This document shows positions 201 to 62,004 of a stretch of 64,000 nucleotides of DNA, piece by piece. The first letter of the stretch is position 1; the number at the start of each line of letters is the position of its first letter. The position numbers and the translations under genes were made by a program. The DNA is from Heptranchias perlo (lineage: Eukaryota), in NCBI RefSeq assembly GCF_035084215.1, contig NC_090340.1:15376001-15440000 (forward strand), read 5' to 3'. The notes below the pieces were generated by a model that ran no database searches, was not told where the DNA came from, and was given only the letters and a program-made list of their open reading frames with translations.

Positions 201-3200
201 ATCGTGACGGTAAATATCGTTACCTTTGGGGTGTTGGATGTGCGGTGGGTGAATTGGCGTTTCTCGTGCTCATAATCATCATTGGGACAAGATGCAATTT
301 GACGAATAAACGTAAGTGTTACCTTAATCGTCTTATTTTCAGAAAAATATTCAGAGGGATAGTTAGAGCGTCATGGGCGGCACAGCAGGAGAATAGTGCG
401 ATTGTTATTTAAAGGTGAAGGTGATATTATCTGATGCCAAAGGAATAGAGACCACCGCTTGCTGCAAATGGCACCGAATTCAGCATCGTACAATGCAAGA
501 ATCCTCACAGAATCATATTATAAAGAATCTGATTATCTGGATTTTAATAAGGGAAATTTCCACTTTGTGGCAGATAAGTGAAATCTGATCGATTGTTTGA
601 TCAATTTGCGGGTCCCTGACTATTTTGGGTAAAGTGGTGTCAGTGTCCAGTCGGTGTCGATGTGCACGACTGCTGATGGCTTCAGGGACTCGGATTTACA
701 ATACAATCCGGAAAATGTGATATCACTAAATAACTGCGACGAGGAAGACCATTCGGTCCATCCGAATTCATCCGCCCAGATGAAAATGTTCCCCCAATGT
801 AGAATCCAGCTGTTTGTTAAAGGATCCTCGGACATTTGCCTCCTTTGCCGTATCTGGAAGTTTATTCCACATGTTGATCGTTGAGAAGGAGAAATTCCTG
901 ACATCATTCTTAAAATTATCATTTACTACTTTTTACCAGTGTCCCCTAGTACAGCCCCTACAGTTAAATATTTAGCACTATAAGGGTACAGTAGTGTAGT
1001 GCTTATGGTACTGAACTTTTAATCCTGAGGCCTGGATTTATAATCCAGAGAAGGTGATTGAAACAGCGCCATGGCATTTCCAGAACTTGAAACCAGTTTT
1101 AAAATTTGGAAATAAAAAGCTGGTTTCAGTGAAAAAGCAAGTGACCGTGAAGCTGCCGGATTGTCATAAAAAGCCAAGTAATTCGTTAATGTCCTTTGGG
1201 GACGGAAACCTGCCGTCCTTACTCGGTCTGGCCTATATGAGACTCCAGTCCCACACCAATGTGGTTAACTCTTAACTGTTCTCTGAAGTGGTCTAGTAAG
1301 CTAATCAGTTGTCTCTAACTCAAGACAACTAAAGATGGAGAATAAATGCTGCCCTTGTTGACCACACCACATCCTGAGAATGAATAAAGCAAAAATGTGG
1401 GTTAACTTTATGCGCTTAACATTCTTATATATTTCCATAAGATCACTGCTCAGACGCCGCCTTTCCAGGCTAAAAGATCAAGTTTATTCAGGGTTTCTTC
1501 ATAACTCAGTTCCTTGACACTGGGAAACCAGCCTGGTGGCTCTTCTCTGCACTGGCGCTAGCGCTAACGCTTGTTCATCAGTGACCAAAACTGGTCGCAG
1601 TATTCAATGGTCCATGTGACCAGAGCACTGATGCCAGCTATTTATTTCCAAATTTTAAATACTGGTTTCAAGATCTCAAAATGCCATGGCGGTGTTTGAA
1701 TCACATTCCCTGGATTATAAATCCAGGCCTCTGGATTAAAAGTTCAGTAACATAAGCACTACACTACCGTACCCTTATAGTGCTAGATATTTAACTGTGG
1801 GGACTGAACTTGGGGACACTGGTAAAAAGTAGTAAATGATAATTTTAAGAATGATGTCAGGGATTTCTTCTTCACAACGATCAACATGTGGAATAAACTT
1901 CCAGTTACAGCAAAGGAGACAAATGTCCTAGTAACCTTTAACAAACAGCTGGATTCTACTTCGGGGAACATTTTCATCTGGGCGGATGAATTAAATTCTA
2001 TTGTTTTGCCTATGTAGTTCAACGTCGTATTGGTTTTGTCCACTGTTGCTCTGCTTGGATGGACATATGTTTAACGTCCAGTCTACTAAGACTCCGAAGT
2101 CTCTTTTAGTTCCATCCTTAGCTATTTCAATGCAATCCATGAAATACATGTATAGTTTAATATTCCTTCCCATCAGTCGTAATCTACTCTTCTCTGCATT
2201 GAATTTCATCTGCCATTGTTCTGCCCACCTATATATCTAAATTCATGTTAAGCTTAACATTGATTCTAAAAATACTTTTGAAAGCACAAACATGGAAACT
2301 GAATAAACATTTTAATCATTGAGTGTGATCAAATATCATTCATTCCCAGGTAAACAGGAAAGTGTAACAACATCGCACCACCATGAAGAGCTGGTAGGTT
2401 CATAACATTCATCCAGGAAGAGAGTTCGAATTTAAATAAATATTGTTATGGTGGAGATATTTATCATAAGCATTTGTCCCTCTTTGATGCGTCATTCAAA
2501 TCGTGTTTTGAGAATTATTTGGCACTTGTTGCGATGTTTGTGTAACTGGTTAAACAAATATTTTTTTAAAGTAGATTTGGTAACTTTATTCAACATTACC
2601 TAGGTAATAATTACTGGTAAATCCATCTAATCGTTGCTTTTGGCACCTGACATTACACGTCCAAGATTCTGAAATTATCTCTTGAAATCATATCTGTAAC
2701 ACCATATGGTAGTGAAAATCAACAGGTTGAAATGTCAGTTACAGTTGACACATTATTTAACGGCCTTAATATTCGCACATTTTTAAATATATTAACTGTG
2801 ATTTTATTCGTAGTCCCGATCATTCCGTGCAATATTTGATCAGCAGTCTGTAAACTGGCGAAGGCAATGAACTAGCCACATAACAAGACAATTTCCTTCT
2901 GGCCCATGCAGGGAGCACAGAATGAGATAGCGCCTTATGCTGCATTAGATTTGAGCAAAGCCAAGAAAAGCCCCGGACGTAAACGTGAAGAGGAGAGGGC
3001 AGCATACGCTCAGGTAGGACCGAGAAGCAGATAAGAGAAACATAGATCACCACCGTGGCACTAACATTCATGTAATAGTGGAGTATTTTGGATTGTGCTG
3101 ACTTTAACCGTGTATTGTATCTAAAGCTATTTGTGAGTTATTCGGATGACTATTTTGAGCAGCATTCCACAAACTAAAAAAAGACCAATCAACAATACTT

Positions 3201-3393
3201 CCAAACATTGGCTTTTCAGGTAAAACAAGGGAGAGCCCGTGACAAGCTGACGTACGCGACTCTAGAATTGTCTGGCTCCGGGAAAGCGGGGAAATCTAAA
3301 AATAACCGGAAAAGCACAGAATATGCCGAGCTGCAAACAAAAAGACAAGGAGGAGTAACAGAGTTCGTCGACACAGAAGCAAGGACCAAATAG
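201..3393 (+). CDS. Gene A (5'-partial): IgSF inhibitory receptor, SIRP-like tail; TM exon plus 3 cytoplasmic exons
   Basis: GT-AG exons 201-311 (TM: DRDGKYRYLWGVGCAVGELAFLVLIIIIGTRCNLTNK), 2350-2393 (RKQESVTTSHHHEEL), 2912-3013 (GAQNEIAPYAALDLSKAKKSPGRKREEERAAYAQ) and 3220-3393 (VKQGRARDKLTYATLE...STEYAELQ...ARTK*). They join in frame and match gene D exon for exon. The ectodomain exons would lie upstream of the window. Confidence 0.85.
765..1992. repeat. Long inverted repeat: arms 765-1131 and 1626-1992
   Basis: The ~367-bp arms are reverse complements with scattered mismatches, e.g. aattcatccgcccagatgaaaatgttcccc / ggggaacattttcatctgggcggatgaatt. Confidence 0.9.
984..1395 (+). mobile_element. 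tRNA-derived SINE with CR1-type tail
   Basis: tRNA-like head; body and AATAAATGCTG...GAATGAAT tail similar to 13532-14003. Confidence 0.7.
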
Positions 3394-5945: not shown

Positions 5946-5969
5946 TTATCTAGATTGACACAGGGCGCA

Positions 5970-16114: not shown

Positions 16115-19100
16115 ATGTCTATGAGGTCTCTGCTTCAGAGCACACAGCTCATGGGAATTATTTACATAGGTATTTTCCTTAGTTCACTCTTTGTCTCTCT
16201 CTCTCTGAAACTCTCTCCGCGATTTTATAACTATAACTAATGTTCATTTTGTTAACAGTTGCTGCCGATACACTGTTTAAAGTGACCCAGGCCCCTGAAA
16301 ACACCAATTCGATCGTTGGTACAAATATTGCCTTCAATTGTACATTTCCCAGTGTTCCAGACGATTCAAATGTGAATATATATTGGTGGAAACTTGGCGA
16401 AAAGGAATTGATTCAACCAGGCTCAGACAGCAGGAAACGATTTAATAATGAGAAAGGAAGAGCCTCCTTCCAGCTCCTGAATGTCAGTGTCCTGGACTCT
16501 GGAGTCTATTACTGCTTAGTGACACTTTTGGGGGACAGGGCTGAAAATGGAAGTGGATCAAAGCTTGTCGTCAGTGGTAAGCATATTGTAAAGAGCGGAT
16601 CGACTGTATAGTCTCACAGTTATTCATAATAAATCAATTACGGCATTCTCTCTCTCGCTCTCGTGTTGTTTTAACATTTCCATTAGAAATCAAAAATTTA
16701 AATTATGGAGAATCGAGTTATGAAATACAACACGTTTAGCACTGTGTACTGGTTTTCAATCTATATTAATCGATTTATTAATAATTATTTATGTTATTTC
16801 ATCCATGTACATTTGCGCAGGAAGCGTGTTCATGCCATACCGGTGTGAATACAGATTGCGAAAAATCTTGAAAGATTTTCAGTATAAATAACATTTCGAT
16901 TGGAATTATTTGAATATAACCTGAACAATTTAAAAACTGCAGTTTGATGATCATCTAAAGGAGAAATTTCATCCTAAACTTGCTATTATCAGGCATAAAG
17001 TCTAATTTCAATTATAAAATTAATACAGAAGTTACTCCACGTGATAAAGAACTTGCACTTATTTAGCGCCTTTCAAGGCGTTCAAAAAGCGCTTTACAAC
17101 CAGTGAAGTATTTTTGAAATGTAGTCACTATTGTCATGTAGGAAAATGTGGCAGCCAATTTGCTCACAGCAAAGTTACACAAACAGCAATGAGACAATGA
17201 CCAGGCAATTAATGATGGTACTTGAGGGATAAATATTGGCCAGGGCAACAGGACAACTTCTCTGCACGTCTTCGAATCGTGCTGTGGGATCCTTTATGTC
17301 CACCACAGAGAGCAGAGGGGGTTACATTTTAACATCTCATCGGATGGCACTCCCCGCAGTTCTTATTTTCCAGTTATAAATGACTCTCTCACGCCGAAGT
17401 AACCCGTGAAATGAAGGTTTCGCCTTTAATTAATAGCCCCGATTGTGATTTTAAAAATTTATTGCAAACCGTACGAGTAACACGAATCAGAGAACTGAAG
17501 GCTGCAAATTGAATTCCTTTCGTGGTTGGGGATAATTGGGAGGAAGGATGTTTGTCGAAGGCGTTTTGTCGCCGCTGTTTATTTATCGGGTTACACTCAG
17601 TAACGGAGCGGGGGGCGGGGGGAGGGGTGGGTGGGGAGGGGAGTGGTTGGGGGAGGTGGTGGGGGGCGCCCGGGCGGGTGTGGGCTTGCGATTCCTCTTC
17701 TCACTGTACTGAGCAACACTGTGTGAGCGCATTCTGAACGTTTTGTCGGGTCGGCAATACCGGGCATAGAAAGTCCGCACAAACGCATTTGTTATTCGCT
17801 GCAGAGACCAGAGCAATGCTTCCCCATGCTTTCCAATTCTTGCAAATAGCGGGAAAATACTGGAAAGTCAGGTTTCGAGATTTGATACAGGGAACAATGT
17901 AAATCATGAACACAATCTATATTAATTAAAATTAATTTGTTCGCTTCAACATAAAGAAACAGATATTTAGCTCTCTGATACTGTTATAGCCGATCTGAAC
18001 TCATATTTCTCCATTTGGAAGGCTCCGTCACAAAAGGGAATAAAGTTCTAAATTGCAGAATATAGCAAGTATTAACTTTCTTCTTTGCTCTTTCACCAGC
18101 TCCCCCAACTCCCCTGAGGATTGTCTCCAAAGCATCTGAAACCAATGTATCTGGTTCTTTCACTCTCGTTTGTGAAATGGCTGCATTTTACCCGGAGGGA
18201 CTGACTACCACTTGGTATAAAAATGATAGAAGCCTTGAGATTGGAATACGTACAACTAAACAGCTCACTAGAGCCGGGATGTATGAAGCTTCCAGCTATT
18301 TTGAAGAGACACAGCCTGTCCAGGGAGGGACTGTTTATGTCTGTCTGGTTTCTCACGTGACCCTCCAGATTCCAGCCATGGCGATTTACTTGGTTCCAAA
18401 TTCTAGTGCAGGTAAGATGTCACTTTTCTTACAAAAACAAACATCTGTCAGTAATCTGTGATTGCTTTATTGCCCAATAGGGGGAAATTTGCCGTATACA
18501 TCATTGAAAGGGAAACATGTTGGAAATTTCGTTACAAATATCCCCAGCGTTATTTTTTTTTGTAAAATTACATCAATATTAAGAATATTGCAATTGATTG
18601 TTCATTTCAAGACCATTTAGATTTTCAGTTCCTGACCTACCAAATTCTGCGGAATGGTTACAACCTTTACAATGGGCGGAACTTTCAATTTTGGTGGGGC
18701 GTAAAACTGGCGGTATGGGATCGTCTGAGTGTTACAAACACTGCTCGAATTTCCTTTCCATTTGTTTCCACGCGCCTGCCGAAGTTGAAAGTTTCGCCCA
18801 ATGCACGTGCACCCCGTCAGTTCAGTAAATCTTTCAACCGGAAAATATTTCTATACAAGATTATTTTTTCCCCATTAGGTCACGTTTATTGATCAATATT
18901 CACACTTCATTCAAACCGCGTTCAGTTTCCCACCCCAGATCAAGCACCACTGATTTAGCGCCACATGATCGAAACGCCAAGCAGCTTAATTTGGTTCAGA
19001 ACAAGTCGGTCACATGAGTGCTGAAGTTCTTTACTCTGAAGTTTCAACTGAGTAAGAAATTCACTGATCCCACTTTGGCAAATGTATATGTGATCATTTC

Positions 19101-42620: not shown

Positions 42621-42834
42621 ACGTGTCAGAGTGTGTCTAACTCGCAGTCCAGCCAGAGGTATAAAGATTGTAGAAACTTTGGATTTTCAGCGTGGGAAAG
42701 GCGCCTGAGGGATGATCTTACAGAGATGTATAAGATAGTTAATGATTTGACAACGGTAGATCAGGAAAATTGCTTTAAATTAAATTGCAGGTTTGATCAA
42801 ATGGCCACAGGTAAACTTGAAACTGATATCATAC

Positions 42835-43420: not shown

Positions 43421-44156
43421 GATGATGACACCATCACAAAAATAGTGGCCAATTCTTACAATGAACATCCGATAGCGTAGTGGAAATGAAATCTCCTTGG
43501 AATCACGTAAGGACCAACTGGATGCCGCAATGAGGTGAATATCGGGTCTTTCAGGGATGGAAAGGCCTTTTTCGTCCGTCGTTACCTTGCGAACATCTGT
43601 TATGAAGACAGAATCGCCAGGTACCTATCATGGTCAAGCGCATTGCGAGTGTATCACAGAAAATGGGCCTCCAACACATCTTGTATTTATAATTCAATCA
43701 ACGGAACTTACTCTTTAAGTCACTGCTATCGACAGTGTGTAAATCTAAGACATATGAAAGGTTCACACACTCAAAACAACTTGACACGTATTCCAAAGTA
43801 TGTCAGCTGGTAATATTCATCCATCAAGAAACGTATCATCCCGCAGAAAGTATTAACATGAAGATTCAGCTGCAACCCTCTCCCCCTGCTTATTACTTAT
43901 ACGTCTGTTTGACAGCATTTACGTAGAATGCATTAAGCTCATCTTATATACAACATCCAACTAGCAGTTATCTTTATATAATCTAATGTTACAGGAAGAT
44001 TGTGCAGCGAAATACAACGGAAACTGTATGCAAACGAGTGTTCCATGAACCCCTGATCCGTCTGGATTGCGGCTCCATCATCTCGTTCCCTGCGTCCGTC
44101 CGTTTCTGTTTTTCTTTCCCAGCTGGATCTGGACATACCTTACTCTTTCCCAAAGG

Positions 44157-47100
44157 CTAATGATAGGCTCTCGAGGAATTATGAGCAGCAGAGACAGAGA
44201 TTGTCAACCGTCCTTTACCTGAAAATTAAAAATAAAATTCAGAACTGTATTTTTTAATAATGTAACTACTTTGATAATTTAGTCTATTTTTCATCCACAT
44301 GCGATGCCCATCTGTGCATGTCAGCATCAATATCATTAGGCTCATAGGCACACTCACCACTGTACCAATATCATTAGACTCAGATACACATTCACCACTG
44401 TATCAATATCATTAAACTCAGAGGCACATTCACCAATGTATCAATATCATTAAATTCACAGACATATTCACCACTGTATCAATATTATTAGACTCATAGG
44501 CACACTCACCACTGTACCAATATCATTAGACTCAGAGACACATTCACCACTGTATCAATATCATTAAACTCAGAGGAACACTCACCACTGTATCAATATC
44601 ATTAAATTCACAGACATATTCACCACTGTATCAATATCATTAGACTCACAGGCACACCACTGCACCAATATTATTAGATTCATAGACACACTCAAAAGCA
44701 TCAATATTATTAGACTCACAGACACTCATCACTGTATCAATATCATTAGAATCACAGCCACACTCCCACTGCATCAATAGCAAACTATTATTACATTAGA
44801 GGAACGTTCTTCAATTATATCCTCTCATTGTAATTCGACAATAATTATAAAAGTAATCTTACACTAAATCAGTGTTGGACTAAGACAAACTTTCCCCAGT
44901 GCTAAACAAATATGCCAACATCTCAGGATGTCAAAAATATTAAGATGCAAAACTTACATTTCTGTTTTAACGTTCATTCGTCGGTACTCTATTACTCGTG
45001 ATTATTGTGTATGTGTAATTGTGTACTTTATCTTCTTTATATTAGGAGGCAACCGATGACCTAAATCATAACCGATGTCGCATTGGTGGGTTTTCACTGC
45101 GCCCAGTGTGGAGTGACATTGAAACAAAGATACCGCTCTTAGATATAAGAATATCTGAGTGAAACTCTTCAGTCTGCACTCACTTCAAATCTAATGCTCC
45201 CTTGCACACATATAATAATTACATTTTCTCACTGAATTAAGATACAACTTAAGGAACCCATACACATTAGAAGACGCCCGCTCGGATTGCCAGTCTCTGT
45301 TGTGTTATATGGGGGGTAATTTTAACCCCCAAGAACGGGTGGGTTGGGTGTGGGTGGGAAGTTAAAAATAGTTGGTATTTTTTGGGCCGCGATCGCAAAT
45401 TTTCTGACTTTGCATTCCCAGTGGGAAGCCTATACTTTTATGCGCCCACGTTAAACCCGGAAGTGGAGCCGGGTTGCGGTCACGACCCAAAAATCAACTA
45501 TTTTCAACTCCCACGCGCCCCCAACCCACCCGTTCTTGGGGGTTAAAATTACCCCCCATGGTCTCAGTTCTAGTCGCAGTTGAAACGCTAAATCTGGCCT
45601 GGGCGTTCAGGGAGAGGAAGAGGGCAATTAGCATGAATTCCTGCTTCTGATCGTTATCTCGAAGCCGCTGCGGCAACATTCCAGTCTGATGAGGACTGAA
45701 TTGGGCTGGACCATGAGATGCCCGTCCACATTAATTCTCTAGACCCACACGTGAACATTGGCACGTTGGGGGAAGGTATGGAGGGCTGTGAAGGCTGTGG
45801 ACATCCCTTGAGAAGGGAACAAAAGAGGAGAAACTCGCAAAGTAATCACACTAAAGCAGCTCACTCTGAAAGGCATGTATAGCGGATTAAAGAACAGTCG
45901 GAGGACACTGACCCCGCAGTTGTTACAGATGTTAATGCAATATTAACAAAATCACTCGGAAAATGGCGCCTGCGATAGGAATCCTTCAACCCTACATATA
46001 AACCTTGGAAGATACAAGGCAGAAGTTGCATTTGTATCGCACCTTTTACGACAACAGGACGTTCCAACGAGCTTCAAAACCATTGAAGTACCTTTCAAGT
46101 GTAGCCATTAATGTAATGTTGGGAAAAGCAGCAGCAAATTTGTGCATAGCAAGGTCCCACAAAGAGCAATGAGATAAATGACCAAATATTCGGTTTTAGT
46201 GAAGTGGATGGAGGGATAAAAATTGGCCAAGACACCGGGGAAACTCCCCTGCTCCTCTTCGAAATAGCGTCATGGGATCTTTTATGTCCACCCGAGAGGG
46301 CAGACGGGCCGCGGTTTAAGGTCTTGTCGGAAAGTCGGTGCCTCTGACAGAGCAGCACTCCCTCAGTACTGCGCTGAAATATTAGCCTAGATTTGTGCTC
46401 AAGTCTCTGGAGTGAGAACTTGAACGCACAACTTTCTGACACAGAGCGAGGAGCTACCACAAGGATCAAAACTGCATCCGATGTTCAGCGTTCACTATTT
46501 GAATCATCCTATAACAAACTGAGCTAAATATGAAAATTATTGTGCTAAAGGTATCGGTTTTCCATGTTGTCTGCAATTTGGTACCAAAGCGTTTTAATCA
46601 GCAATTTTAAATTACATAAGAAACAGCTGACTAAAGCACATTTCCATCTCCATACCGCCAATTTTATCTGTGTATATGCTTTCAAGGTGATTTCCCGAAT
46701 TAATAAAGCATTCTCTTACCTTCAATGGAAGATATTTTTACGTGGTCCACAATAATACCCGTCAGTGCAAGAATTACCAAAAAAGCCAGGAGAAGCCGAA
46801 CAATCATGATGAGCGAGATGCTTAAACTGTGACCTACGGTGTTGGATTAGAATCAAGATTTTAAAAAACTATTGGATATAAGTATTATTGAATGGAAGCA
46901 ACAATGATTAGTTTATACGGAGGAATTGGGTCCATTAAATGCCTAGTTTAAACCGCACTCCATGGGGGTCGATTTGAACTTGCCTAAATTGGCGTTAACC
47001 ACCTCAAAATAGGCTCGGTAGATTTACCACCTTGTTAACGCCAAGCATGGCGCCTTCCACTTTAAGGGCTGGCCTATTGTTGGGGACAAGCACCTGTTTG

Positions 47101-50100
47101 TTTCAGGCAGTCGGCTCCCGTTCATATCCAAATCGGGGTTCTATGATGTACACATGACCCCGATTGTCATTTTAGGATAGAACTGGTGCGCCCTGCACTA
47201 TCTGGCCATTTTACTAGCGATTGTAGATTAAGAGGCCCTGACCAGACAAGTTTTAAATTATTTTTGTGTGGCCAGGAAGAGCAGGACTGCCCCTCTGGGC
47301 CCCACACAACATAATCTGGGCCACTATAACCCTCGCTCCACCTTCCGCGATCGTAACACCCCGATTTAGCATGCTGCCTACTGACAGGTCTGGGCCGCCC
47401 TGCGCGCTGCATCAACGTCAAGAATCCTGATTTTCCCTAAAGTAGCCTGGGGTTGACTCCCCTCATGGGGGTCTGGTTCTCAACGGCACAGGGGAAAAGT
47501 GCCAAATTTTCTCCTTCTGAACTGCCATTTCGATGACTCCTTAATTTTACTCTAAGATCTGCAGGGAGAGAAACTGTTCCGAGCCCATGACCATAATGAT
47601 AGCTAGAATTGATTTAGAAGCAATGCGTCATGCCTCACCAATCTACAAGCACCTGAGGCGAGAAGTGGCAAAGTGGATGAAGGCCACCCAGGTGGTAGTT
47701 TACTTATAATTTTGAAAGATACGTGAGAAAGGTCTGCATGTGAGGCATCTGAAGGAAATTCAGGCTCATGAAATTCCGGTAGAATTGGAAAGTGATAAAT
47801 GGACAAATCGTTTCGTTCCCTGTCTGGGGAGCAGTAGAGTTCTACTGGTCCATTCTAGGTTCTGTGCTTTGAAGTCGATTAATGAAAAATATTGACGTGT
47901 CACTTCTAGTAATACTCCTAGATGTGTTGATGGTGTCAATGTATGGATAGGTGAGAAGTTGGTTAATAATATTCAAATAAATCTGGGCCCTCGAAAGATG
48001 TTGGCGGCAGTTTTACGCACAATCTGTTCCAATCTTACCTTTAACGGTGTAGCTGACACCGGCGGGCACCACAAGAGAGACATGAGATACCAAACAGGTA
48101 TAAACAACCCCGCTGCGGGCAGGCTGTACTTCTTCCAAAAAACTGGAAACCTCGTATAGTCCTTTGGCGGTCCTGTTTTTCACAGTTTCTATTCCAGTCA
48201 GAATTTCGACACCATCTCTTCGCCAGGAGATTCCTAAATGCTCCGGGTAAAAGGCAGCCGTTTTACACTCGAGTTTCAGAGAAGCCGGTAAAATCCCTTC
48301 AATAGGAGCGATTTCCAGGGGGGTTGGGGAAACTTTAACAGAAAAGAGTTGTTCCTATTAATCCCTGTGTATTTATTACTGTATAATTTGTAACTGTAAC
48401 ATCGCAATCTTACCTGAAACTATAAATGCATGGGTGCAGATTTATTATTTTCTATCACAGTTCGTACATGATTATTACAGTCGAATAGCCAAATTTCACC
48501 AGGCGCGTTCACGGGCACGAAACCATGGGAAAGTGAATTTTCTACCGCCGTTGGTTATTAGTTTTTAGGTAGAGTCCATATCTCTGAGCAAGTGTTTGCA
48601 ATTTCGTAAATAGTCGTCCTGTACATTAAGACACCACGGCGCATGTGGAAGGTCGGTTTGGAATCTCAAGGCTGCATTGTTATGAAAAACCGTTTGCTCT
48701 GTCTGGGTGAGATTCTCCGACACTGGCCCAGTGAGATAACACACTGTACTCAGGATTTGGGGAACTCATGAAAATTATTTCTGCAGGGCAGAGGCTGACA
48801 CCCTACCACACTACATTCTTTTTCCGAAATAAAATCCAGAATCTTACATTTTTAAAAACCTGGAGAGAAATTAAAGCATTTCGATTTTGAGGGGGCAATT
48901 GATCAATTTTTAATCATTATTTTAAGCATTTGATATTGAGCCACTAACATTTTAACAATGAAAACATGAGCTGACATCCATCCCAGCAATTAAATCATCA
49001 ATACCATAGCATATTATAAAAATATTATGATTGACCCGTGCAATACCCTTTATTCCACATCATTGATCAGTCGTGCTCCTTGAAAACACCACAGAAGTTA
49101 TATCCTGGATAACTAAACGGAAGAAAATCTATCTCTTATGTCTCTATTCCATGGGCCCTCCTAATTCCTTGCAATATCTTATGGCAAAGTTCTACCTTTC
49201 CTACATTACAAAATGCAGATCCTATTCGCCCAGTGAACATATGTAGATAATTACTTCGAGAGCAAGTCAAGACAATTTGGGCGACAAATTCGTCCTGGGT
49301 CCACAGTTCACAGCGGGCGACAGCGAATTTGCAGCCCGTTTTTCACTCAGCTTGATTGACCTCAATGGAGAAGAAAACCGGGCGGAATGTAAAACGGACT
49401 GCCGATTACTTATCGCCTGTAATGCGCTACCGCGCAAGTCAGATTTATACCCCAATACCACTTTGCTGTGAACAATGTCAATGGAATTCTTCTAGGTAAA
49501 CACTGTGAATATTTCACCTCTAGCATTAATCCCAAAAAACATATTTTAGGATCCTCACCAATACTTAGACCCCCCCGCTTAGGCTAAGGCATCAAGCACA
49601 GGCCCCCAGAATGGTGAGATCTTTGGGCACTATCTCAAGATCTGAAGAAGTGTGCTGTGTTCTGAGTCAGAGCTTAAACAACTACCTTCTGATGATTAGT
49701 CCAACATAGCCGTTCGATGCGAGGTATAACAGAGAAGATACTTCAGCAGAGTCAACCTTACCTCCAAACTGTTGGATGCTTTAGACCATTTTTGAGCAGT
49801 TAACGTCAGTTAATTCAACCCCAAGATCGTGTTCCAGAGCTTTGGGGTTCTGTAAATTACGCTGTTCCCTTCTCTATGGAAACAATTTGAATTTTGCCTC
49901 CTTTAGTTAGTAGAGAATTATGTTTACTAACTCTCCAAGTGTTTAATCAGAAAAAATCCCCGTGACCCAAGCTTATGTCATCTTTCCAGTTGGTGAGCCT
50001 GAGCCCATTGGAAGAACACCCTCACTGGGTTTTCTCTCTTTTGGCTGAAGCATGGCTTATAAACTGCCCTCACATTACTGTGAGGGTTTCATCCGGCAAG

Positions 50101-52710
50101 GATGCCTCAAACGCCACTTTTTCCTGTGGGTGTTTATTGATTAGTATCTCTAGCATTAGTATGAATATGGAATCGAAGATGAATTCGTGGTTCATTCTTC
50201 ATTTCGGAGATGTCTTGTTCCGTGAGGATGATTCGAGTATGATCCGAGACCACTTTTTGGTCAATACTTGGACCATGTCATGACCTATCTCCTCTGACAC
50301 CCAAAAGATTTTATTTTTTAATACACCCTGTGACACTGGGAATACTAGGAATATAGTCCCATGTACTGGGTTGGTATATCCTCAAAATATCCGCCAGGCC
50401 CATCTCACTGCTAAATATAGAAAATATCCCTTCGACAACAACATAATTTTTACAATTCCTTCGGGAACGGTCCAACAGCAGATCTGAAGCAAGATTAAAA
50501 TTAACACCTTTTATAATTGACAGTTTAGGTAACTCTACTTTACACACTATTCGGGTATTGTGTCTGCCCATTATTAGGGACAAATACATTAACTAGAATT
50601 AATCTATCATTACAATATATCTACCCTCCAGAGCTTCGGTGTTCCATTATAAATGTACTCGACTTATGAATTAATATTACCACTCTAAATTTCCTCAAAT
50701 AAAAAAGGTCAATGTATTTCCTTCACGAAGGACTTCTTGGATTTTGAAGACCCTTTCTCATCAAAGTGGATCCGCTGTAGGAAGGCTACTCCCATCTTTA
50801 ATCGGCTTAAATATTGCCAAGGTTTAACGCAGTTCCGTGAATTTTGGATTCCCTTCACAATCCTGGTGATCAGCTTAATACGGGTACTACTGATCATCTC
50901 TGTGTTTTAAATTTGAAATCCTTGACCTGCATCCCCTTGACCCACCTCCAGTTACCTTAAACCTGAAAGCAACCTGTAGTCCCTAGGAGACATAAAATGC
51001 ATGTCGATTGTTCATTTACCGATTTCGCGCTACCAGCAGGAATTCTCGTCTGGCTGCTTTGCAAATTGAGAGATTGCGGGCAGTAGCATGAACTCGGAAA
51101 ATTAACTGTAAAGCAATAAGGGAAATTCTATCAAACTGTATCAGACGCTGCTGCACCTCATTGATGTCGGGGAAGTTCCTTAACTGAATACTTTCCGTGC
51201 TTCAGTTGCCGTACTTCCTTGTTGCCTCAAGGATCTTAGGTTTTTCTTGGAATCTGAGCGTTTTGAAAATGATTGTTCTTGGGGATTTGTGCATTATAGC
51301 AGGAGCCAGGACCCCCTCCATTTCCATCTTTGAAGATTCTGATCGCACCCGAAGCTCTGATAAGATACCTTGAGGATAACCTATGGTAATCTTCTCTTCC
51401 ACCACTCTGGAAGATTAACCAGTTGAAGATTATTATTCTTGGAGTGAATTTTCAAATCCCCTTTCTGAATTGTCAACTGCTGGCGGTATTTTCCTTCAGC
51501 ACATCAATCTCTTTCAATACCAACTCTAATGGATCTTCTGCCCCTAACAGCCTTTCCTCCAGCTCTGTAATCTATTTTCAGTCAATTTCTTTCTGAGAAA
51601 GGATATATCTTGCTAGGCCCCACTCTTGCTTTTATTTATGAAATTTGTGTGCGTGTGGGTGTTTATCGCCCTGATCCTCGTTTTAACACAAAAGCTTAGA
51701 CCCCATTCCCCGCCAAAGAGCAGCGTTACGAATGGATCATTAGCAATGTGGAGGCAGTTGGAGTATTATTACCTGAAAATAATTATAATTTATAAATTAC
51801 TCCGCTTTGAATCAATTTTATTATAATAATATCACTTTTCACGAGTCTGGTGCGATGACTGCATGTACTCGTATACGGGGCATACAACAGGGGCTAACTG
51901 TCCTCTTACCTATTAATATTCATTATTTTATTATATCCCATTATGTTTCAACGAGATTACATTCTGCATTTAAAATGCGTATTTAAAGTATGATATAAAA
52001 TTCGGTGCTTAATACACATGTAAAAACACAAATGTGAAAGTGCTGCAGATTCTTTAAAATGGTTGTCCATCCCTTAATTTTGCTGAGTTTTAAATATAGC
52101 TGAAACTCTCCGACTCCCCCGTACAATGACACTTACCGTACACAGTAAGCTGGGAGCCAGCTCCATCTCCAATAGATTTTTCCTGATGTTTTACTTTACA
52201 GTAATATATTCCGGAATCGTCGATACTCACATTCACGATATCAAAGGAACCACTTCCCTTTTTGACATTAAATTGCTTACTGTTATCTGGTTCCAGGAAC
52301 TTATTCTCGCCCCGTCTCCACCAAACAACATCGGGAGCATCTTGAAATAGGGGAAAAGTGCAGAACAAGGAAACATTTGCACCTCTGGCAACATTCACGT
52401 GTTTCGGGAATTGTTCCACTTTGCTCGAAGTTACTTCGACGTCTATCAAAAAATAAACAAGAAAACTGATATAATAGTGTGTACTTTCAGGGGGAAAAAA
52501 CAACAATTACGACTTAGAAATTTAAAAACAAGAAAATTAGCCAAATTAATAAAATAATGAGAAAGACGGAAAAAAGAAATGTGCACAAAATATGACGACT
52601 TTTTAAACACCAGATTTTTTCGATAAGCATAAAGCTGTAAGATGAACAAACACACCTGTGTAAATAATTCCGAGTAAAGATATGCACAAAAGTGCGGCGC
52701 TCACCGCCAT
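44157..52710 (-). CDS. Gene C: leader-VJ-TM(Arg)-short tail; NKp30/NCR3-like putative activating receptor, about 178 aa
   Basis: GT-AG exons on the minus strand: 52710-52656 (MAVSAALLCISLLGIIYT), 52442-52137 (V), 46833-46720 (GHSLSISLIMIVRLLLAFLVILALTGIIVDHVKISSIE) and 44218-44157 (GKGRLTISVSAAHNSSRAYH*). Total 537 nt, in frame. The last exon begins GK like the first cytoplasmic exon of B and D. No intact C1 exon was found. Confidence 0.72.
44326..44780. repeat. Minisatellite, 38-bp unit, about 12 copies
   Basis: Approximate unit CAATATCATTAGACTCAGAGGCACACTCACCACTGTAT. Confidence 0.95.
45311..45557. mobile_element. MITE with ~90-bp terminal inverted repeats (Harbinger-like GGG...CCC ends)
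   Basis: ggggggtaattttaacccccaagaacgggtgggttggg ... cccaacccacccgttcttgggggttaaaattacccccc. Confidence 0.85.
46020..46470 (-). mobile_element. Deu-domain SINE (SacSINE1-like)
   Basis: tRNA-like head, GAAGAGGAGCAGGGGAGTTTCCCCGGTGTC core and L2-like tail. Confidence 0.75.
48414..48780 (-). pseudogene. Decayed C1 pseudo-exon inside gene C intron 2
   Basis: Collinear fragments in shifting frames match gene D C1: CYLTGPVSENLTQT vs CETAEFYPENFTLT, IYEIANTCSEI vs LYEVSSTLEET, KFTF vs KYTC. It ends in a CAG|gtaagat donor identical to the gene B C1 donor. It contains stops and frameshifts. Confidence 0.55.
49950..51610 (-). mobile_element. Decayed L1/Tx1-like LINE (ORF1 3' part + endonuclease)
   Basis: PRTIIFKTLRFQEKPKILEATR (L1 ORF1-like); KGIQN..LKMGVAFLQ and GVNFNL..LDRS (APE-like). 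Confidence 0.6.
52137..52442 (-). CDS. Gene C VJ-type Ig V-domain exon
   Basis: LFCTFP...VWWR...IVNVSIDDSGIYYC...GDGAGSQLTVY; canonical splice sites, phase 1-1. Confidence 0.92.
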
Positions 52711-56863: not shown

Positions 56864-59800
56864 CTATTTGGTTCTTGCTTCGGAGTAGGCAGCCTCTGTT
56901 ACTCTTTGTTTTTTTGTCTGCAGCTGGGCATACTCTGTGCTTCTTTCGTTATTTTTGCATTTCCCCGTTTTCTCTGAGCCAGTCAATGCTAGAGTCGCGT
57001 ACGTCAGCTTGTCACGAGTTGCCCTTTGTTTGATCTGTAAAGCCAATTTAGAAATTTTGTAAATTGGTCGTTTTGCCAGTTTGTGGACTGCTGCTCAAAG
57101 CAGTCATCAGAAGAACATACAAACAGCCTTAGATACAACACATGGCCAAAGTCAGCACAGACATATGCCCGGCACTATCGCATGAATGCTGATGTTACAC
57201 TGGTGAGCTATGTTTCTCTGATCTGTTTCTCAGCCCTACCTGAGCGTACACAATCTTCTCTTCTCGTTTACCTCCTGGAGTTTTCCTGTCTCTGGTCAAA
57301 TCTAATGCAGTATAATGCAGTATCTCAGCCTCTGCTCCCTGCATGGGCCAGAAAGCGAATGATTGGTTATGTGGGCTGTTCATTGCCTTCACCAGTTTAC
57401 GTACTGCTAATCAAACATTGAACAGAATTACCTGGGCTGGAGGTCCAGTGCACAAATCATAATTAATATATTGGCTTAAGTGCGAATATTAAGGCCGGTG
57501 AGTGCTGTGGTCAATGTGACTAATATTTAAACCTGTCAAAATTCACTCTTCAACACTGTGTTACAGAAATATTTAAATAAGCATAAAGGTTTTTTTTCAA
57601 ATACAAGAATAGATGAATCTATAAACAATTATTACCGAGGTACATTTTCAATGAAACTGGCAGTTTTCTTTTCCTCTATTTATCCATTTTTACCAGCAAA
57701 GCATCGGATGTCAAATACGTTTCTAACCACGATTTGAATGATTCACTAAGACCGAATAAATATTTTAGTAAATTGACTTAAACTGTTCTGACATGATTAT
57801 GATAAAATCTCTCCATTATAGCAATCTTTCTTCACATTTGAGCCCTCTGGAGAGGACGAATGAATGAACGTACCAGCTCTTCACCACGGGTCGGTCCCAC
57901 TGCACGTCCCTGTTTACCTGGAAACGAATGAAATTAATGATATTGAAAGATTGAAATATTTACTCAGTTTCCATGTTAGTGACGTCAAAGACATTTCTAG
58001 AGTCCGTACAAAACCGAACATGATTTTCAATTTCAGATTGGACTGACAGTGTTAGAATCCCTGTCCTTGCAGCGATCCGCAATGGTGTAAAACCATTCCT
58101 CTTCGGAGCCTCACACCGATTCACTCAATCTAGTTGCGCCTCCACAACGGGATGGGTTGATAGGTGATTGTGTGTCAGGGTACATTTAATTTATCACGCT
58201 GCAAAGTGGACATTTCTGTTGCAAATACCCAGCTAATTATTTCCATTGCTAATGCGACTCTGTGAGGATTTCTGCGTCTTAAAGTGTATTTGGAACAATC
58301 TGCGCTTCCTGAAAACAGATAACACCGCCTTCAACTGGAAGTCTTAATCGAGTTCTCCTTCCCGTGTGTTACCCAGAGACTCTCACTAACCCTGAGGTTT
58401 CGGACTAAAATCAAACCCTTACAGTAGATCTTACCTTCATTATTCTGCAATCGGCACCGCCTCCCAATGAAGACCATGAGCACGAGAAACGCCAATCCAC
58501 CCACCGCACAGGCAGGAGCCCAGAAATAAAGGGACACATCAATGACACTAGCTGCAAGATTAATAGGAACACTAAGTTATGCCGGGCGTTTGCTAAAAAG
58601 AGGCCTGAAGATAGTTTATTGGTTAAACTATAGTTGATGCTTTCAGTAACTCTGCAGTACAGAACGGCAATAATGAATTTTAAATAAAAATATTATATTT
58701 TTAGATATATTTGAAGTAACTTATTCATTGAATGAGCGAGATATTCTGGATTAATCTGCGAAGCGGGCAACCGGTTTAGGGATCTCAAAACACTGTTTCA
58801 GGAGAGTAAGAATGTGAGAGTGATAAATTTCCCTGGACCGAATGGCGTGTTCTTGTCCTTGACCTTTCTTATTTATTAACATATAGTTTGAAGAAATCGG
58901 ACGGAATTTGGTCACACCCGTTCCCCGCACTAAATTCTGGATTGCAGCAATCGGCTAAAAACCCCATTCAATTATCCGCAATGTGATTTTTAAAGTAAAA
59001 ATGTCACTGAGTAGTAAAGGAAATCAACGGACGATGTTTTATTGATTATTGTCTGTCGAGGCTAAGAGTTCTTAATAAAATGATGCATTGAACCGGCTGT
59101 ACTGTAGCCAGGTTTCGGGCCCAGTTTAATTGAGATTTGTGCGACAGGTCCCAATCGAACCCACAGTGGCATGGAGAGGGGAGGGTTAAAAGTTGGACAG
59201 AGAGTTCATTTCAGAATTTTGCACTAGAAGTAGCAGAAAGGGGGATCAGGATCGAAACTGCATTGGGAGAAGCCCGTGATCAGACAAATTGACTGCAGCT
59301 CCTTTTAACAGTCTTCATGCAGGGATAGCCGGCAATGGTAAAGAATAAAACCATTTTGACGTGGAAACAAAAAAAGTGAAAAATTATTAATAGTAAGCAG
59401 GAGAGGAAAAATAATCGGATACAAAAGATTAACTCTTGTTTATATTTGTTATACGGCAAATAGAGGAATTTGAAGACAGATAGGGTGTAATTGAGAATAT
59501 TTGTGTGGCGGACGATATAACCCGGGTTCACAACACATCGTGTTCAAATATGTTATATATTAAAACAAGAATTTTATGTTTTCGTTGATATTTTCCACGA
59601 ACTATCTTCCTGATTATCAATATGTACAAACTCTACGATGTAGCTCATTGCGAATTTGACAGTAGCTGGACTGTTGGCCTCGTACCTGGGTTAGATTTAG
59701 TATAGGTGATAACAGCTGGAGTCTCGAGGGAGACATGAGATACCGAGCAGGTATATTTGGCGCCGCTCGAGACAGGCTGCGTCTCTTCCAAAGTGCTGGA

Positions 59801-62004
59801 AACTTCATACAGCCCCTCAATGTTCTGCCGTTTAACGGTGTGTATTCCTATTGCAGTTTCGACGCCATTTTTATACCAAGTGAGGGTGAAGTTCTCCGGA
59901 TAAAACTCAGCCGTTTCACACATAAGAATCTGAGGCGCAGATGAATTCACTTCAGCTGTCAGAGAGACAATAGTCAGTGGAGTTGGGGCAGCTGCGGAAC
60001 AGAAAATGAGCAAAATCGAGTTATCGGACACCATTGGGAGAAATATGATTCTGATTTACCTTCGGTCCATTTTATTTTAACAGCAACATTCCAAAGCACA
60101 GCCTCCTGTCGCTTTAATGTTAGGCACATCATCTACACACACCTCATCCATTTCTCTCATCGCCGCCGGCATCTGTTCAATTTTACCTTCGCTCTCGAGT
60201 CCAAGACATTGAGATATTCAACAGACACGTCACAACGATTGTCTGCGTTTCATAACCCAAATAATTAAATAAATAAATTCTGGGGGAGAGATGTCATGCC
60301 CAGTCCCTCCATGTTTGGTACTCACAGATAGACAGAGACAAGTAAGCTGCACGTTGTCGATGATAAAACGAGGGTATTAGTCGGTATCGGACAGATCTCA
60401 CAGCCGAGGCATGACAATTGGTGAAAGAAGCTATATTCGGTGGAAACTTAGACGGTTTCAGCAACACAGTTCCTGCGTATTGTATTTATTGGGGGTTAGT
60501 GAGGTGACAACGTTGTGAATTCCGAGCTCCAGTTTGTTGAGTGAATCCGTTAATCAACAGTTAGTCGCACGCTGGCTTTCAAATCCGTGACGCGAACGAG
60601 CCAATCATCATGTGAGAATTAATTTCGGGAATGATAAATCCCAGAGACAGCGGTGGGGGCAGACAGAGCTTCCAATTATATTCTCTGGCGTTTAGCAGAA
60701 TGAGAGGTGATCTCATTGGAACATATAAGATTCTAAGAGGGCTTGACAGGGTAGATGCTGAGACGATGTTTCCCCTGGCTGGAGAGTCTCGAACTTGGGG
60801 GCATAGTCTCAGGTTAAGGGATCGGACATTTAGGACTGAGATGAGGAGGAATTTCTTCACTCAGAGTAGTGAATATTTGGAATTCTCTACCCCAGAATGC
60901 TGTGGATGCTCAGTCGTTGAGTATATTCAAGACTAAGATCGATAGATTTTTGGACTCTGAGGGAATCAAGGGGTATAGGGACCCGGCGGGAAAGGGAGTT
61001 GAGGTCGAAGATAAGCCATGATCTTATTGAATGGCGGAGCAGGCTCGAGTGCTGTATGGCCTACTCCTGCTCCTATTTCGTATGTTATGTTCTTTTGTTC
61101 AAAATGGGCTAAGAGGCCTGTATATGGTGGTTAAGGCTCATTAATATAAACAATATTCATTTAAATTTATTCCGAACTTCCGCTATCAGACATCTGGTGT
61201 ATAGATTGTATTTGGAGTTATAGTCTATCTGGTTAATATTGATACTTCTTGCAGCATTCTGCGTATGAAGGGTTACATTGTATGTTTAATTAGCATTTCT
61301 ATACAGAGAACACGAACATACAACTTAACTTTCTCGCGAAATGTAATATAAATCATTATACTGTCAAAATTTGTACAATAAAACAATTTTAAAACATCCC
61401 CGTTTGTTGCGTTGGATATATTTGCGATAGTCCAGTTCTCCAGTGTTTCACACTCACCATGCACAATTAGATGTGATCCGGTTCCATTCCCTCGAACTAT
61501 ACCCTGACGCATCACTGCGCAGTGATAGATTCCAGAATCTTGGAAAGTCGCGCTCAGCAACTGAAAGAAACCGCTCGCTTTACTTTTCAGACCGAATCGT
61601 TTTCTGTCATCGGCGCTTGTGCGCAGGTATTCATTCTCACCCTGTTTCCACCAATGCACTCTTACCCAGGAATGGTCTTGAGAGATGGGGAATATGCAGT
61701 AGAAGGTGATGTTTCCCCCTCTGGATACAGACGCTTGTTCGGGCGCTTGAGTCACTCTGAATGAAGTGTGGTCCACAGCTACAGAAAACATAGTCAAGTA
61801 CGGATTAATTTTATTCGATGGGACATGGAGGTGAAAGAGAGAAAGAAGAATCGATATAGAGGAATTACCGTTCACTAAATTAATGTGGAAACTATTTTTA
61901 GGAAGCATTTTATAAATTAAAGTAGCTGCTATAGTGAATAAAGAGGTACCTGTGCAAATAATCCACCGAAGAGTCAGGCAAAGAAATAACAAATTCGTCC
62001 ACAT
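56864..62004 (-). CDS. Gene D: leader-VJ-C1-TM-four ITIM/ITSM-type motifs; SIRPalpha-like inhibitory IgSF receptor, about 370 aa
   Basis: GT-AG exons on the minus strand: 62004-61950 (MWTNLLFLCLTLRWIICT), 61778-61458 (V), 59991-59686 (C1), 58551-58435 (TM: LYFWAPACAVGGLAFLVLMVFIGRR), 57917-57874, 57338-57240 (LHYTAL...IVYAQ) and 57034-56864 (I...LTYATL...TEYAQL...AYSEARTK*). Total 1113 nt, in frame. Confidence 0.9.
59686..59991 (-). CDS. Gene D Ig C1-set exon
   Basis: ILMCETAEFYPENFTLTWYKNG...KYTCSVSH. Confidence 0.92.
60672..61092 (+). mobile_element. CR1 3' fragment in the gene D V-C1 intron
   Basis: RMRGDLI..TWGHSLRL..RRNFFTQ; 3' UTR GGCCTACTCCTGCTCC. Confidence 0.85.
61458..61778 (-). 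CDS. Gene D VJ-type Ig V-domain exon
   Basis: FYCIFP...HWWK...QDSGIYHC...GNGTGSHLIVH. Confidence 0.92.

What the first reader, a model, noticed from the sequence alone, without database searches (positions are those of the whole stretch)
201..62004. Paired-receptor cluster of germline-joined VJ(-C1) IgSF receptors with both inhibitory and activating members
Seen: four paralogues. B, C and D share a 55-nt leader exon and a V exon with CxFP, WW and J-like GxG motifs; all four share a related TM exon (LAFLV), but their signalling ends differ. D and A have four Tyr motifs, B has a TM Arg plus two Tyr motifs, and C has a TM Arg and no ITIM. Known: ITIM tails versus charged-TM short tails define paired receptor families (SIRP, LILR, CD300, NITR). 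VJ plus C1 without rearrangement is the architecture proposed for antigen-receptor ancestors and is seen in SIRPs; NKp30 is VJ-only with a TM Arg. Inference: this is a cartilaginous-fish innate receptor system linking SIRP-like and NKp30-like designs within one family. It may be undescribed, or a divergent part of the known shark NCR3 family.
Basis: partly seen in the sequence, partly recalled or inferred. Interest (0 to 1): 0.9.

Follow-up and report, generated by a model that had tools for sequence, protein, structure and literature searches.

The report
Shark SIRP-like paired V-C1 receptor genes
This stretch of sevengill-shark DNA carries four genes of a large, shark-and-ray-wide family of antibody-like but non-rearranging cell-surface receptors. 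One gene is built as an "off switch", one as an "on switch" and one as a mixture, much like the SIRP receptors of mammals.

Summary
The window (Heptranchias perlo) carries four paralogues: A (3' half only), B, C and D. B, C and D each have a 55-nt leader exon. Each has one V exon with an in-exon J-like GxGxxLxV motif, a C1-set exon and a TM exon containing LAFLV.

- D is a public gene model with three ITIMs and one ITSM-like motif.
- A has four Tyr, two in canonical motifs.
- C has Arg inside the TM helix and a 29-aa tail without an ITIM. Its C1-to-TM and TM-to-last-exon splices appear in spliced cDNA contigs.
- B has Arg at the outer TM boundary and two degenerate Tyr motifs.

No member is NKp30-like: C keeps a spliced C1 exon, and a V-only profile search found no NCR3-named protein. 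The family covers all cartilaginous fishes (164 clusters at E<=1e-30). Pipelines label it SIRP-like or tapasin-like, and its nearest named relatives are SIRPs.

B, C and D belong to three old lineages (V 42-45% identical), so they are not a strict pair. A strict partner of D (D-like ectodomain on C's Arg-TM) lies elsewhere on the chromosome.

This scan had already found the family elsewhere in this genome. Signalling is inferred, not shown.

The parts
201..313 (+). Gene A, TM exon (RDGKYRYLWGVGCAVGELAFLVLIIIIGTRCNLTNK). V and C1 exons lie upstream of the window. Contains a Glu in the hydrophobic stretch.
   Evidence: AG acceptor at 199-200 and GT donor at 314; tblastn to family proteins
2350..2393 (+). 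Gene A, cytoplasmic exon 1 (44 nt, KQESVTTSHHHEEL)
   Evidence: Same length and splice context as D's 44-nt exon
2912..3013 (+). Gene A, cytoplasmic exon 2 (APYAAL, AAYAQ|V)
3220..3393 (+). Gene A, last coding exon with stop (LTYATL, TEYAEL)
   Evidence: 67% identity to D's last exon; sequence read
16116..16170 (+). Gene B, 55-nt leader exon (MSMRSLLQSTQLMGIIYI)
16259..16576 (+). Gene B, V(J) exon, phase 1-1 (CTFP, WWK, NGSGSKLVV)
   Evidence: 77% identical to the Heterodontus orthologue P0015
18100..18411 (+). Gene B, C1-set exon
19799..19918 (+). Gene B, stalk/TM exon with Arg at the outer TM boundary
   Evidence: the R/K at this position is kept in orthologues P0015, P0013, P0017, P0018, P0019 and P0039
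20454..20494 (+). Gene B, cytoplasmic exon 1 (KERKDEANICEES), placed by homology only
22705..22833 (+). Gene B, last coding exon (MIYAAV, TEYSEM, stop), placed by homology only
   Evidence: Aligns to the tails of P0018 and P0017, which carry LTYATV/VTYAEV and TEYAEI/TVYADI
52656..52710 (-). Gene C, 55-nt leader exon (MAVSAALLCISLLGIIYT)
52137..52442 (-). Gene C, V(J) exon (CTFP, WWRR, DGAGSQLTV)
   Evidence: Pfam V-set E=3e-12
48474..48809 (-). Decayed extra C1 exon in gene C's V-C1 intron, with stop codons
   Evidence: Three collinear same-frame weak tblastn matches to the start, E-F and G parts of family C1 domains
48039..48332 (-). Gene C, intact C1-set exon, spliced in cDNA
   Evidence: tblastn. 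Contig X1 record 7 covers 48037-48332 plus the TM exon with 0 mismatches and ends exactly at the acceptor. Sequence.
46720..46833 (-). Gene C, TM exon with Arg inside the helix (SLIMIVRLLLAFLVILALTGIIVDHVK)
   Evidence: R-x16-[DE]H signature shared with P0032, P0050, P0060, P0067, P0082 and P0094
44157..44218 (-). Gene C, last coding exon (KGRLTISVSAAHNSSRAYH, stop)
   Evidence: Spliced contig X2 record 8 joins it to the TM exon, 0 mismatches
45861..46003 (-). Candidate alternative last exon of gene C. It is homologous to the annotated tail of paralogue P0082 and encodes IRYTCL. Not seen spliced.
61950..62004 (-). Gene D, 55-nt leader exon (MWTNLLFLCLTLRWIICT)
   Evidence: identical to P0012
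61458..61778 (-). Gene D, V(J) exon (CIFP, WWK, NGTGSHLIV)
59686..59991 (-). Gene D, C1-set exon
   Evidence: Pfam C1-set E=2e-13
58435..58551 (-). Gene D, stalk/TM exon with no charged residue in the TM
57874..57917 (-). Gene D, cytoplasmic exon 1 (44 nt)
57240..57338 (-). Gene D, cytoplasmic exon 2 (LHYTAL, IVYAQ|I)
56864..57034 (-). Gene D, last coding exon (LTYATL, TEYAQL, AAYSEA, stop)
   Evidence: 100% identical to P0012 residues 279-335

Best explanation
The window is a segment of a very large, chondrichthyan-wide multigene family. Its members are non-rearranging V(J)-C1 type I membrane receptors whose nearest named relatives are the SIRPs. Four genes are present.

- D, and probably A, are inhibitory. 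The V-C1 ectodomain binds a ligand, Src-family kinases phosphorylate the ITIM/ITSM tyrosines, and SHP-1/2-type phosphatases are recruited.
- C is activating. Its short tail cannot signal, and the Arg in the outer third of its TM helix would pair with the TM Asp of an ITAM adaptor of the CD3zeta/FcRgamma/DAP12 kind.
- B belongs to an old lineage that combines a basic residue at the outer TM boundary with an ITIM+ITSM tail, a bifunctional design like KIR2DL4 or CHIR-AB1. In this species both motifs are off-consensus.

Shown here: gene structures, domain types, motifs, orthology groups, and the splicing of C's C1, TM and last exons.

Inferred: ligand binding, phosphatase and adaptor recruitment, and the cell types involved.
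For: - Species and gene D: P0012, P0088 and P0196 (H. perlo RefSeq isoforms) match D's exons at up to 100%.
- Domains: Pfam V-set and C1-set. All Ig and TM exons are phase 1-1 with canonical splice sites.
- Gene C: spliced contigs with GT..AG joints at exactly the predicted C1/TM and TM/last-exon borders, 0 mismatches.
- Family size and range: 4939 hits at E<=1e-3 and 164 clusters at E<=1e-30 among 1.84 billion representatives. Members occur in sharks, rays and Callorhinchus.
- SIRP affinity: the family profile against the PDB gives SIRPalpha 2wng at 1e-25 with V and C1 aligned in one stretch, and SIRPgamma at 1.5e-22. These outrank all listed antibody heavy chains except one chimera; only that chimera and UrIg2 score higher. 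Atlas feature neighbours of paralogue P0004 are SIRPalpha clusters at 0.97. The nearest non-chondrichthyan hits looked up are SIRP-like proteins of lizard, frog and lungfish, beside differently named turtle, skink and viper proteins.
- Old lineages: B, C and D sit in three separate starred V clades with orthologues in other orders.
- Constraint on C's Arg: an R-x16-[DE]H TM signature is kept in six distinct proteins from five species and several V clades, while the residues between vary.
- Family-wide mix: of 92 V-C1 representatives, 29 are ITIM-tailed, about 15 are basic-TM with a short tail, and about 9 are dual.
- Strict pairing: P0082 (H. perlo, same chromosome) has D's V end, a C1 87% identical to D's, and a TM 87% identical to C's Arg-TM.
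Against: - No binding, phosphorylation or adaptor data exist.
- B and A have no RNA support here. No H. perlo protein for B was returned by the search with its catshark relative.
- B's motifs (M at Y-2, M at Y+3) and two of A's (A at Y-2) miss the ITIM consensus. A has a Glu in its TM.
- B's Arg may lie outside the membrane.
- A 2014 survey found no FcRgamma homologue in shark genomes (PMC4016189), so the adaptor is unknown.
- Structure searches do not single out SIRP. Foldseek gives Ig light chains and TCR beta. VIA-align ties B7-H6, PD-L2, butyrophilin and Neph at Z 14-15.
- V and C1 exons searched alone against the PDB hit antibodies, not SIRP.
- A candidate alternative last exon of C would add an ITIM-like IRYTCL.
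Confidence: 0.8

Rival explanations
1. The genes are divergent members of the known, MHC-linked shark NCR3 (NKp30) family.
For: They share a germline-joined VJ-type V exon with a GNGT-like G strand. Gene C has a TM Arg like NKp30. Two relatives are auto-named 'NCR3 ligand 1-like', which refers to B7-H6, not NCR3.
Against: - Every member here has a C1 exon, and C's is spliced into cDNA. NKp30 has a single V domain.
- A V-only family profile searched among 2567 candidates of 76-241 aa gave five hits, all family members and none named NCR3.
- The search with D's V domain found only SIRP-like and tapasin-like named family members.
- Another note of this scan places a shark-type MHC class III block on a different piece of this genome (unchecked).
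- The NCR3 paper (Immunogenetics 2021, 73:333) could not be read and its sequences could not be fetched, so no direct comparison was made.
Confidence: 0.05
2. The family is the direct orthologue of tetrapod SIRPs. D/A would be SIRPalpha equivalents that bind a shark CD47, and C a SIRPbeta equivalent that uses DAP12.
For: SIRPalpha is the best non-antibody, non-UrIg PDB match to the family profile, aligned across V and C1. Atlas neighbours are SIRPalpha clusters. The tail pattern LTYATL...TEYAQL resembles what I recall of the SIRPalpha tail (not tested). The decayed second C1 exon in gene C hints at a former V-C1-C1 layout.
Against: - There is one C1 domain, not two.
- The activating member has Arg in the outer third of the TM, not a central Lys.
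- Single exons do not find SIRP in the PDB.
- Structure searches are non-specific.
- A 2026 survey dates the SIRP family to Tetrapoda (PMC13262535).
- ITIM+ITSM tails recur in unrelated families.
Confidence: 0.15
3. Only C and D are working genes. A and B are decaying copies of a birth-and-death family, so the apparent range of signalling types in the window partly reflects erosion.
For: - B's ITIM and ITSM both carry Met at a consensus position, and its tail stops earlier than D's.
- A has a TM Glu and two non-canonical Tyr contexts.
- No H. perlo protein for B was returned.
- Earlier follow-ups found damaged copies 0.56 Mb away, and a reader note reports a pseudogene 15 kb upstream.
- A decayed C1 exon lies in gene C.
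Against: All of B's six exons and all of A's four visible exons are open, with canonical splice sites. B's lineage, with its boundary R/K and ITIM+ITSM tail, is conserved from sharks to sawfish and mobula.
Confidence: 0.25
4. The proteins are B7/butyrophilin-like ligands (V-C ectodomain) rather than receptors.
For: VIA-align ties B7-H6, PD-L2, butyrophilin and B7-H3 at the top with Z 14-15. Some relatives are auto-named 'CD276 homolog' or 'NCR3 ligand 1-like'.
Against: The V exon carries the J-like GxGxxLxV G strand. By my recollection this is typical of SIRP and antigen-receptor V domains and not of B7 V domains (not tested here). The tails carry ITIM/ITSM or the TM carries Arg, which are receptor hallmarks. 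B7-H6 is not among the 60 best PDB matches to the family profile, whereas SIRPalpha ranks third.
Confidence: 0.05

Closest known systems
SIRP family (SIRPalpha, SIRPbeta, SIRPgamma)
   Same: N-terminal V domain with an in-exon J-like strand, followed by a C1-set domain. The inhibitory member has a four-tyrosine ITIM/ITSM tail and the activating member has a basic TM residue and a short tail. SIRPalpha is the best non-antibody, non-UrIg PDB match to the family profile, and SIRPalpha clusters are the nearest Atlas feature neighbours.
   Different: One C1 domain instead of two. Arg in the outer third of the TM instead of what I recall as a central Lys. Hundreds of genes spread over megabases rather than a handful. 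Orthology, synteny and CD47 binding are untested.
NKp30 / shark NCR3 family
   Same: Non-rearranging VJ-type V exon; TM Arg in gene C.
   Different: NKp30 has no C1 domain, whereas all members here have one, spliced in C. No NCR3-named protein was found by the V-only profile search. MHC linkage is not indicated.
UrIg / UrIg2 (non-rearranging VJ-C1 genes of elasmobranchs; PMC12227049)
   Same: Single-exon VJ, split leader, C1-set domains, restricted to elasmobranchs. UrIg2 is the second-best PDB match to the family profile at 1.6e-28.
   Different: The nurse shark UrIg2 has nine C domains, no paired signalling types are described, and both genes are expressed mainly in liver and gill. The PDB score is boosted by its four Ig domains.
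Bifunctional receptors such as KIR2DL4 and chicken CHIR-AB1 (from my own knowledge; CHIR-AB1's basic TM residue is mentioned in PMC4016189)
   Same: Gene B's lineage combines a basic TM-boundary residue with an ITIM-type tail.
   Different: Those receptors have C2-type domains and belong to the LRC. Adaptor use by B is untested, and in H. perlo the motifs are off-consensus.
Other paired IgSF multigene families of fishes: NITR (teleosts) and MDIR (skate, CD300-like; PMC3031540)
   Same: Large clustered families with ITIM and charged-TM members. NITRs also have J-like V domains (my own knowledge).
   Different: By my recollection NITRs are V or V-I and known only from bony fish, and MDIRs are CD300/TREM-like V domains. 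Neither has a C1-set domain.

Membership tests
SIRP family | N-terminal V-set domain with a germline J-like G strand | tested here: met
   Pfam V-set hits. GxGxxLxV lies inside the same exon in B, C and D.
SIRP family | Two membrane-proximal C1-set domains (V-C1-C1) | tested here: not met
   B, C and D each have one intact C1 exon. C also has a decayed second one.
SIRP family | Inhibitory member with four cytoplasmic tyrosines in ITIM/ITSM contexts that recruit SHP-1/2 | tested here: inconclusive
   The motifs are present in D (LHYTAL, IVYAQI, LTYATL, TEYAQL) and partly in A. Recruitment cannot be tested with these tools.
SIRP family | Activating member with a basic TM residue and a short tail | tested here: met
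   Gene C has Arg inside the TM and a 29-aa tail without an ITIM, supported by spliced contigs. SIRPbeta, as I recall it, has Lys.
SIRP family | Orthology or synteny with the tetrapod SIRP cluster, and CD47 binding | not testable with these tools
SIRP family | Sequence affinity above other IgSF families | tested here: inconclusive
   The family profile ranks SIRPalpha third in the PDB at 1e-25, and Atlas features agree. Single exons and fold searches do not single out SIRP.
NCR3 / NKp30 family | Ectodomain of a single VJ-type V domain, no C domain | tested here: not met
   C1 exons are present in B, C and D and spliced in C.
NCR3 / NKp30 family | V-domain sequence relationship to NCR3 | tested here: inconclusive
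   No NCR3-named hit in the V-only profile search or in the search with D's V domain. Those searches depend on shared words, and NCR3 sequences could not be fetched for a tree.
NCR3 / NKp30 family | Linkage to the MHC | not tested
   Only an unchecked note of this scan places an MHC class III block on another piece of the genome.
Paired (activating/inhibitory) receptor family | Closely similar ectodomains joined to opposite signalling modules | tested here: met
   Not within the window: V domains are 42-45% identical. Within the species, P0082 has D's V end, a C1 87% identical to D's, and C's Arg-TM at 87%.
Paired (activating/inhibitory) receptor family | Clustered multigene organisation | tested here: met
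   Four genes lie in 62 kb. P0002, P0004, P0022, P0029 and P0082 are on the same 66.5-Mb record. Scan notes place more copies from -11.8 Mb to +0.19 Mb.
UrIg family | VJ followed by several C1-type domains | tested here: not met
   There is a single C1 exon per gene. The nurse shark UrIg2 has nine C domains.

The most novel reading that the evidence does not exclude
This V(J)-C1 family is the main paired innate receptor system of cartilaginous fishes. It would fill the role that KIR, LILR, FcR-like and NITR families play in bony vertebrates, which a 2014 survey could not find in sharks. It would also descend from the same ancestor as tetrapod SIRPs, moving the origin of SIRP-type signalling to the base of jawed vertebrates. 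Its conserved R-x16-[DE]H transmembrane module would define a receptor-adaptor pairing not yet described in sharks.
Probability: 0.25. Interest if true: 0.75.

Novelty: new variant of a known kind. Interest (0 to 1): 0.5.

Why it matters
Paired inhibitory/activating Ig-like receptors set the activation thresholds of NK and myeloid cells. A 2014 survey found no LRC, FcR-like or FcRgamma homologues in sharks (PMC4016189). A 2026 survey dates the SIRP family to tetrapods (PMC13262535).

A family with at least 164 clusters across all cartilaginous fishes, holding conserved inhibitory, activating and dual lineages, would be a strong candidate for the shark counterpart of those systems. It also adds another non-rearranging V(J)-C1 lineage to the debate on the origins of antigen receptors.

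The conserved Arg-TM module gives a concrete handle for finding the shark signalling adaptor.

In the papers I could search I found no description of the family, but gene models are public and this scan had already met it several times in this genome.

Tried and rejected
- **The Atlas** would not read new sequence. A stored paralogue, P0004, was used instead.
- **The shark NCR3 paper** (Immunogenetics 2021) is not held, and NCR3 sequences could not be fetched. No tree with named NCR3, SIRP or B7 sequences was built.
- **Single-exon PDB searches** gave only antibodies and generic Ig domains.
- **The UrIg2 match to D's C1 exon alone** proved to be a sum over several C domains, not a close relationship.
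- **Fold searches.** Foldseek on the model of P0004 gave Ig light chains and TCR beta. VIA-align gave tied B7, butyrophilin and Neph rows. Neither discriminates between families.
The fossil C1 exists, but an intact C1 exon lies 141 nt downstream and is spliced.
- **A low-depth joint 44216/46041** is an exonised repeat with stops in all frames.
- **Reads** were laid only on gene C's 3' part. One call of at most 6000 letters was allowed, so A, B and D have no read evidence here.
- **Spliced models.** I searched them exon by exon and did not join the window's exons for any search, fold or script. Whole-protein analyses used stored public homologues (P0004, alignment A1).

Full report
**What is there.** The 64-kb window has no N. 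It comes from the sevengill shark Heptranchias perlo. The RefSeq proteins P0012, P0088 and P0196, all on a 66.5-Mb record, match gene D's exons at up to 100% identity.

Four paralogues are present. A and B lie on the + strand and C and D on the - strand. B and C are tail to tail across about 21 kb that is rich in retroelement ORFs.

I fixed the exon borders by reading the splice sites; the coordinates are in the parts list.
- B, C and D each start with a leader exon of exactly 55 nt.
- Each then has one V exon containing CxFP, WW[KR] and a J-like G.G[ST].L.V strand, then one C1-set exon, then a stalk/TM exon containing LAFLV.
- All Ig and TM exons are phase 1-1.
- Pfam calls the V exons V-set (E down to 3e-12). 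It calls D's C1 exon (2e-13) and part of B's (1.5e-6) C1-set.
- LAFLV occurs four times in the six-frame translation, always in a TM exon, against 0.16 expected.

**Signalling ends.**
- *Gene D.* The tail carries LHYTAL, IVYAQI, LTYATL and TEYAQL plus a fifth Tyr.
- *Gene A.* Only the TM and three cytoplasmic exons are in the window. It has APYAAL, AAYAQV, LTYATL and TEYAEL, so two of the four motifs are canonical. Its TM holds a Glu.
- *Gene C.* It has Arg inside a 26-residue hydrophobic stretch and a 29-aa tail without an ITIM.
- *Gene B.* Arg sits at the outer edge of the TM. The tail, placed by homology, carries MIYAAV and TEYSEM, both off-consensus.

**RNA evidence.** Only one read-laying run of at most 6000 letters was allowed, and I spent it on gene C's 3' part. 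Two runs from the assembly's own sample hold spliced contigs with GT..AG joints at exactly the predicted borders.
- C1 joins the TM exon (46833/48039) in two contigs. One (record 7) matches the window perfectly; the other (record 11) has 12 mismatches.
- The TM exon joins the last exon (44218/46720) in record 8, with 0 mismatches.
- Record 7 stops on the window exactly at the C1 acceptor (48332) and carries 89 further letters. This is as expected if it continues into the V exon.

So gene C is a V-C1 receptor with the Arg-TM and short tail in its mRNA. A decayed extra C1 exon does lie at about 48809-48474. A, B and D have no read evidence here, though D is a RefSeq model with six isoforms.

**The family.**
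- A search with D's V domain found relatives at 56-81% identity in Scyliorhinus, Heterodontus, Mustelus, Mobula and Hypanus. Sources name them SIRP-alpha-like, SIRP-beta-like, tapasin-related-like or CD276 homolog.
- An exhaustive profile search of 1.84 billion representatives gave 4939 hits at E<=1e-3 and 164 at E<=1e-30.
- Members include the chimaera Callorhinchus.
- The nearest hits outside cartilaginous fishes that I looked up include proteins named SIRP-like from a lizard, a frog and a lungfish. Alongside them are differently named turtle, skink and viper proteins.
- In a V-domain tree, B, C and D fall in three separate well-supported clades, each with orthologues from other orders; B's and D's clades include rays.
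- Within the window the V domains are only 42-45% and the C1 domains 46-52% identical.

**Is it a paired family?** Among 92 V-C1 representatives, a simple classifier finds 29 ITIM-tailed, about 15 basic-TM with a short tail, about 9 dual and 19 neutral/short; 20 are truncated or lack a TM.

Gene C's TM type has a strict R-x16-[DE]H signature. It is kept in six distinct proteins from five species, in several V clades, while the residues between vary. That argues for selection on the Arg.

B's lineage keeps R or K at the TM boundary in most orthologues (Gln in Mustelus). It has canonical ITIM+ITSM tails in Chiloscyllium and S. torazame.

A strict partner of D exists elsewhere on the chromosome. 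P0082 (XP_067853651) has D's V end, a C1 87% identical to D's, and a TM 87% identical to C's Arg-TM.

**Closest known family.**
- The family profile against the PDB ranks a chimeric antibody chain first, UrIg2 second (1.6e-28) and human SIRPalpha third (1e-25, V and C1 aligned in one stretch). SIRPgamma follows at 1.5e-22. SIRPalpha scores above every other listed antibody heavy chain.
- Atlas feature neighbours of paralogue P0004 are SIRPalpha clusters at 0.97.
- Against this, single exons find only antibodies, and fold searches give Ig light chains/TCR beta or tied B7/butyrophilin rows.
- The V-only profile search found no NCR3-named protein.
- The one-C1 layout fails the architectural test for SIRP, NKp30 and UrIg alike.

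I therefore call it SIRP-like, not a SIRP.

**Literature.** I found no paper describing this family. PMC12227049 treats UrIg/UrIg2 and NCR3 as the non-rearranging VJ genes of sharks. PMC4016189 found no FcRgamma, FcR-like or LRC genes in sharks. PMC13262535 dates the SIRP family to tetrapods. The shark NCR3 paper could not be read.

**Earlier work in this scan.** Other windows of the same chromosome, from -11.8 Mb to +0.19 Mb, hold the same kind of gene. Two follow-ups called them shark SIRP-like receptors. The new points here are:
- the RNA-supported activating member;
- the conserved Arg-TM module;
- the dual B lineage;
- D's strict partner.

**Limits.** All signalling mechanisms are inferred from motifs.

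Noticed in passing
window 48474-48809 (-): A decayed C1 exon with stop codons lies 141 nt upstream of gene C's working C1 exon. It points either to a tandem exon duplication or to a former V-C1-C1 layout.
   Followed up: partly
window 254-268 (+), gene A TM exon: A Glu lies within the hydrophobic TM stretch (AVGELAFLVL) where D has Gly. A Mobula relative (P0072) also has a TM Glu.
   Followed up: no
window 46734-46831 and 48037-48287: A second spliced contig (X2 record 11) uses the same C1/TM junction but has 12 mismatches in 349 nt. It is an allele or a near-identical paralogue of gene C expressed in the same animal.
   Followed up: no
window 45861-46003 (-): A candidate alternative last exon of gene C, 82% identical to the annotated tail of paralogue P0082. 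It would add an ITIM-like IRYTCL. Unspliced contigs lie at 45693-45847, but no joint to the TM exon was reported.
   Followed up: partly
window 46041-46500: A high-copy repeat reaches contig depths in the thousands. One low-depth contig splices a piece of it (46041-46140) to gene C's last exon, with stops in all frames.
   Followed up: yes
window 61778-61458 (-), gene D V exon: RefSeq isoform X3 (P0012) removes 35 codons from inside the V exon. The junction lies after ...DHSW and before LLSATFQ, and the loss would break the V fold.
   Followed up: no
window 22807-22818 (+), gene B tail: The degenerate ITSM reads YSEM, which fits the YxxM motif bound by PI3K p85 SH2 domains. Orthologues have YAEI or YADI.
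   Followed up: no
window 24000-44000: The spacer between B and C is full of retroelement ORFs. These include a 582-aa reverse transcriptase ORF (31442-33190, -), an ORF with an endonuclease-like sequence (33287-33790, -) and two near-identical ORFs at 28084-28401 and 30886-31236.
   Followed up: no
P0001 (Scyliorhinus torazame): This public model fuses a D-like V domain to a B-like V-C1-TM. It is probably two neighbouring genes merged, which suggests that D-like and B-like genes are also adjacent in catshark.
   Followed up: no
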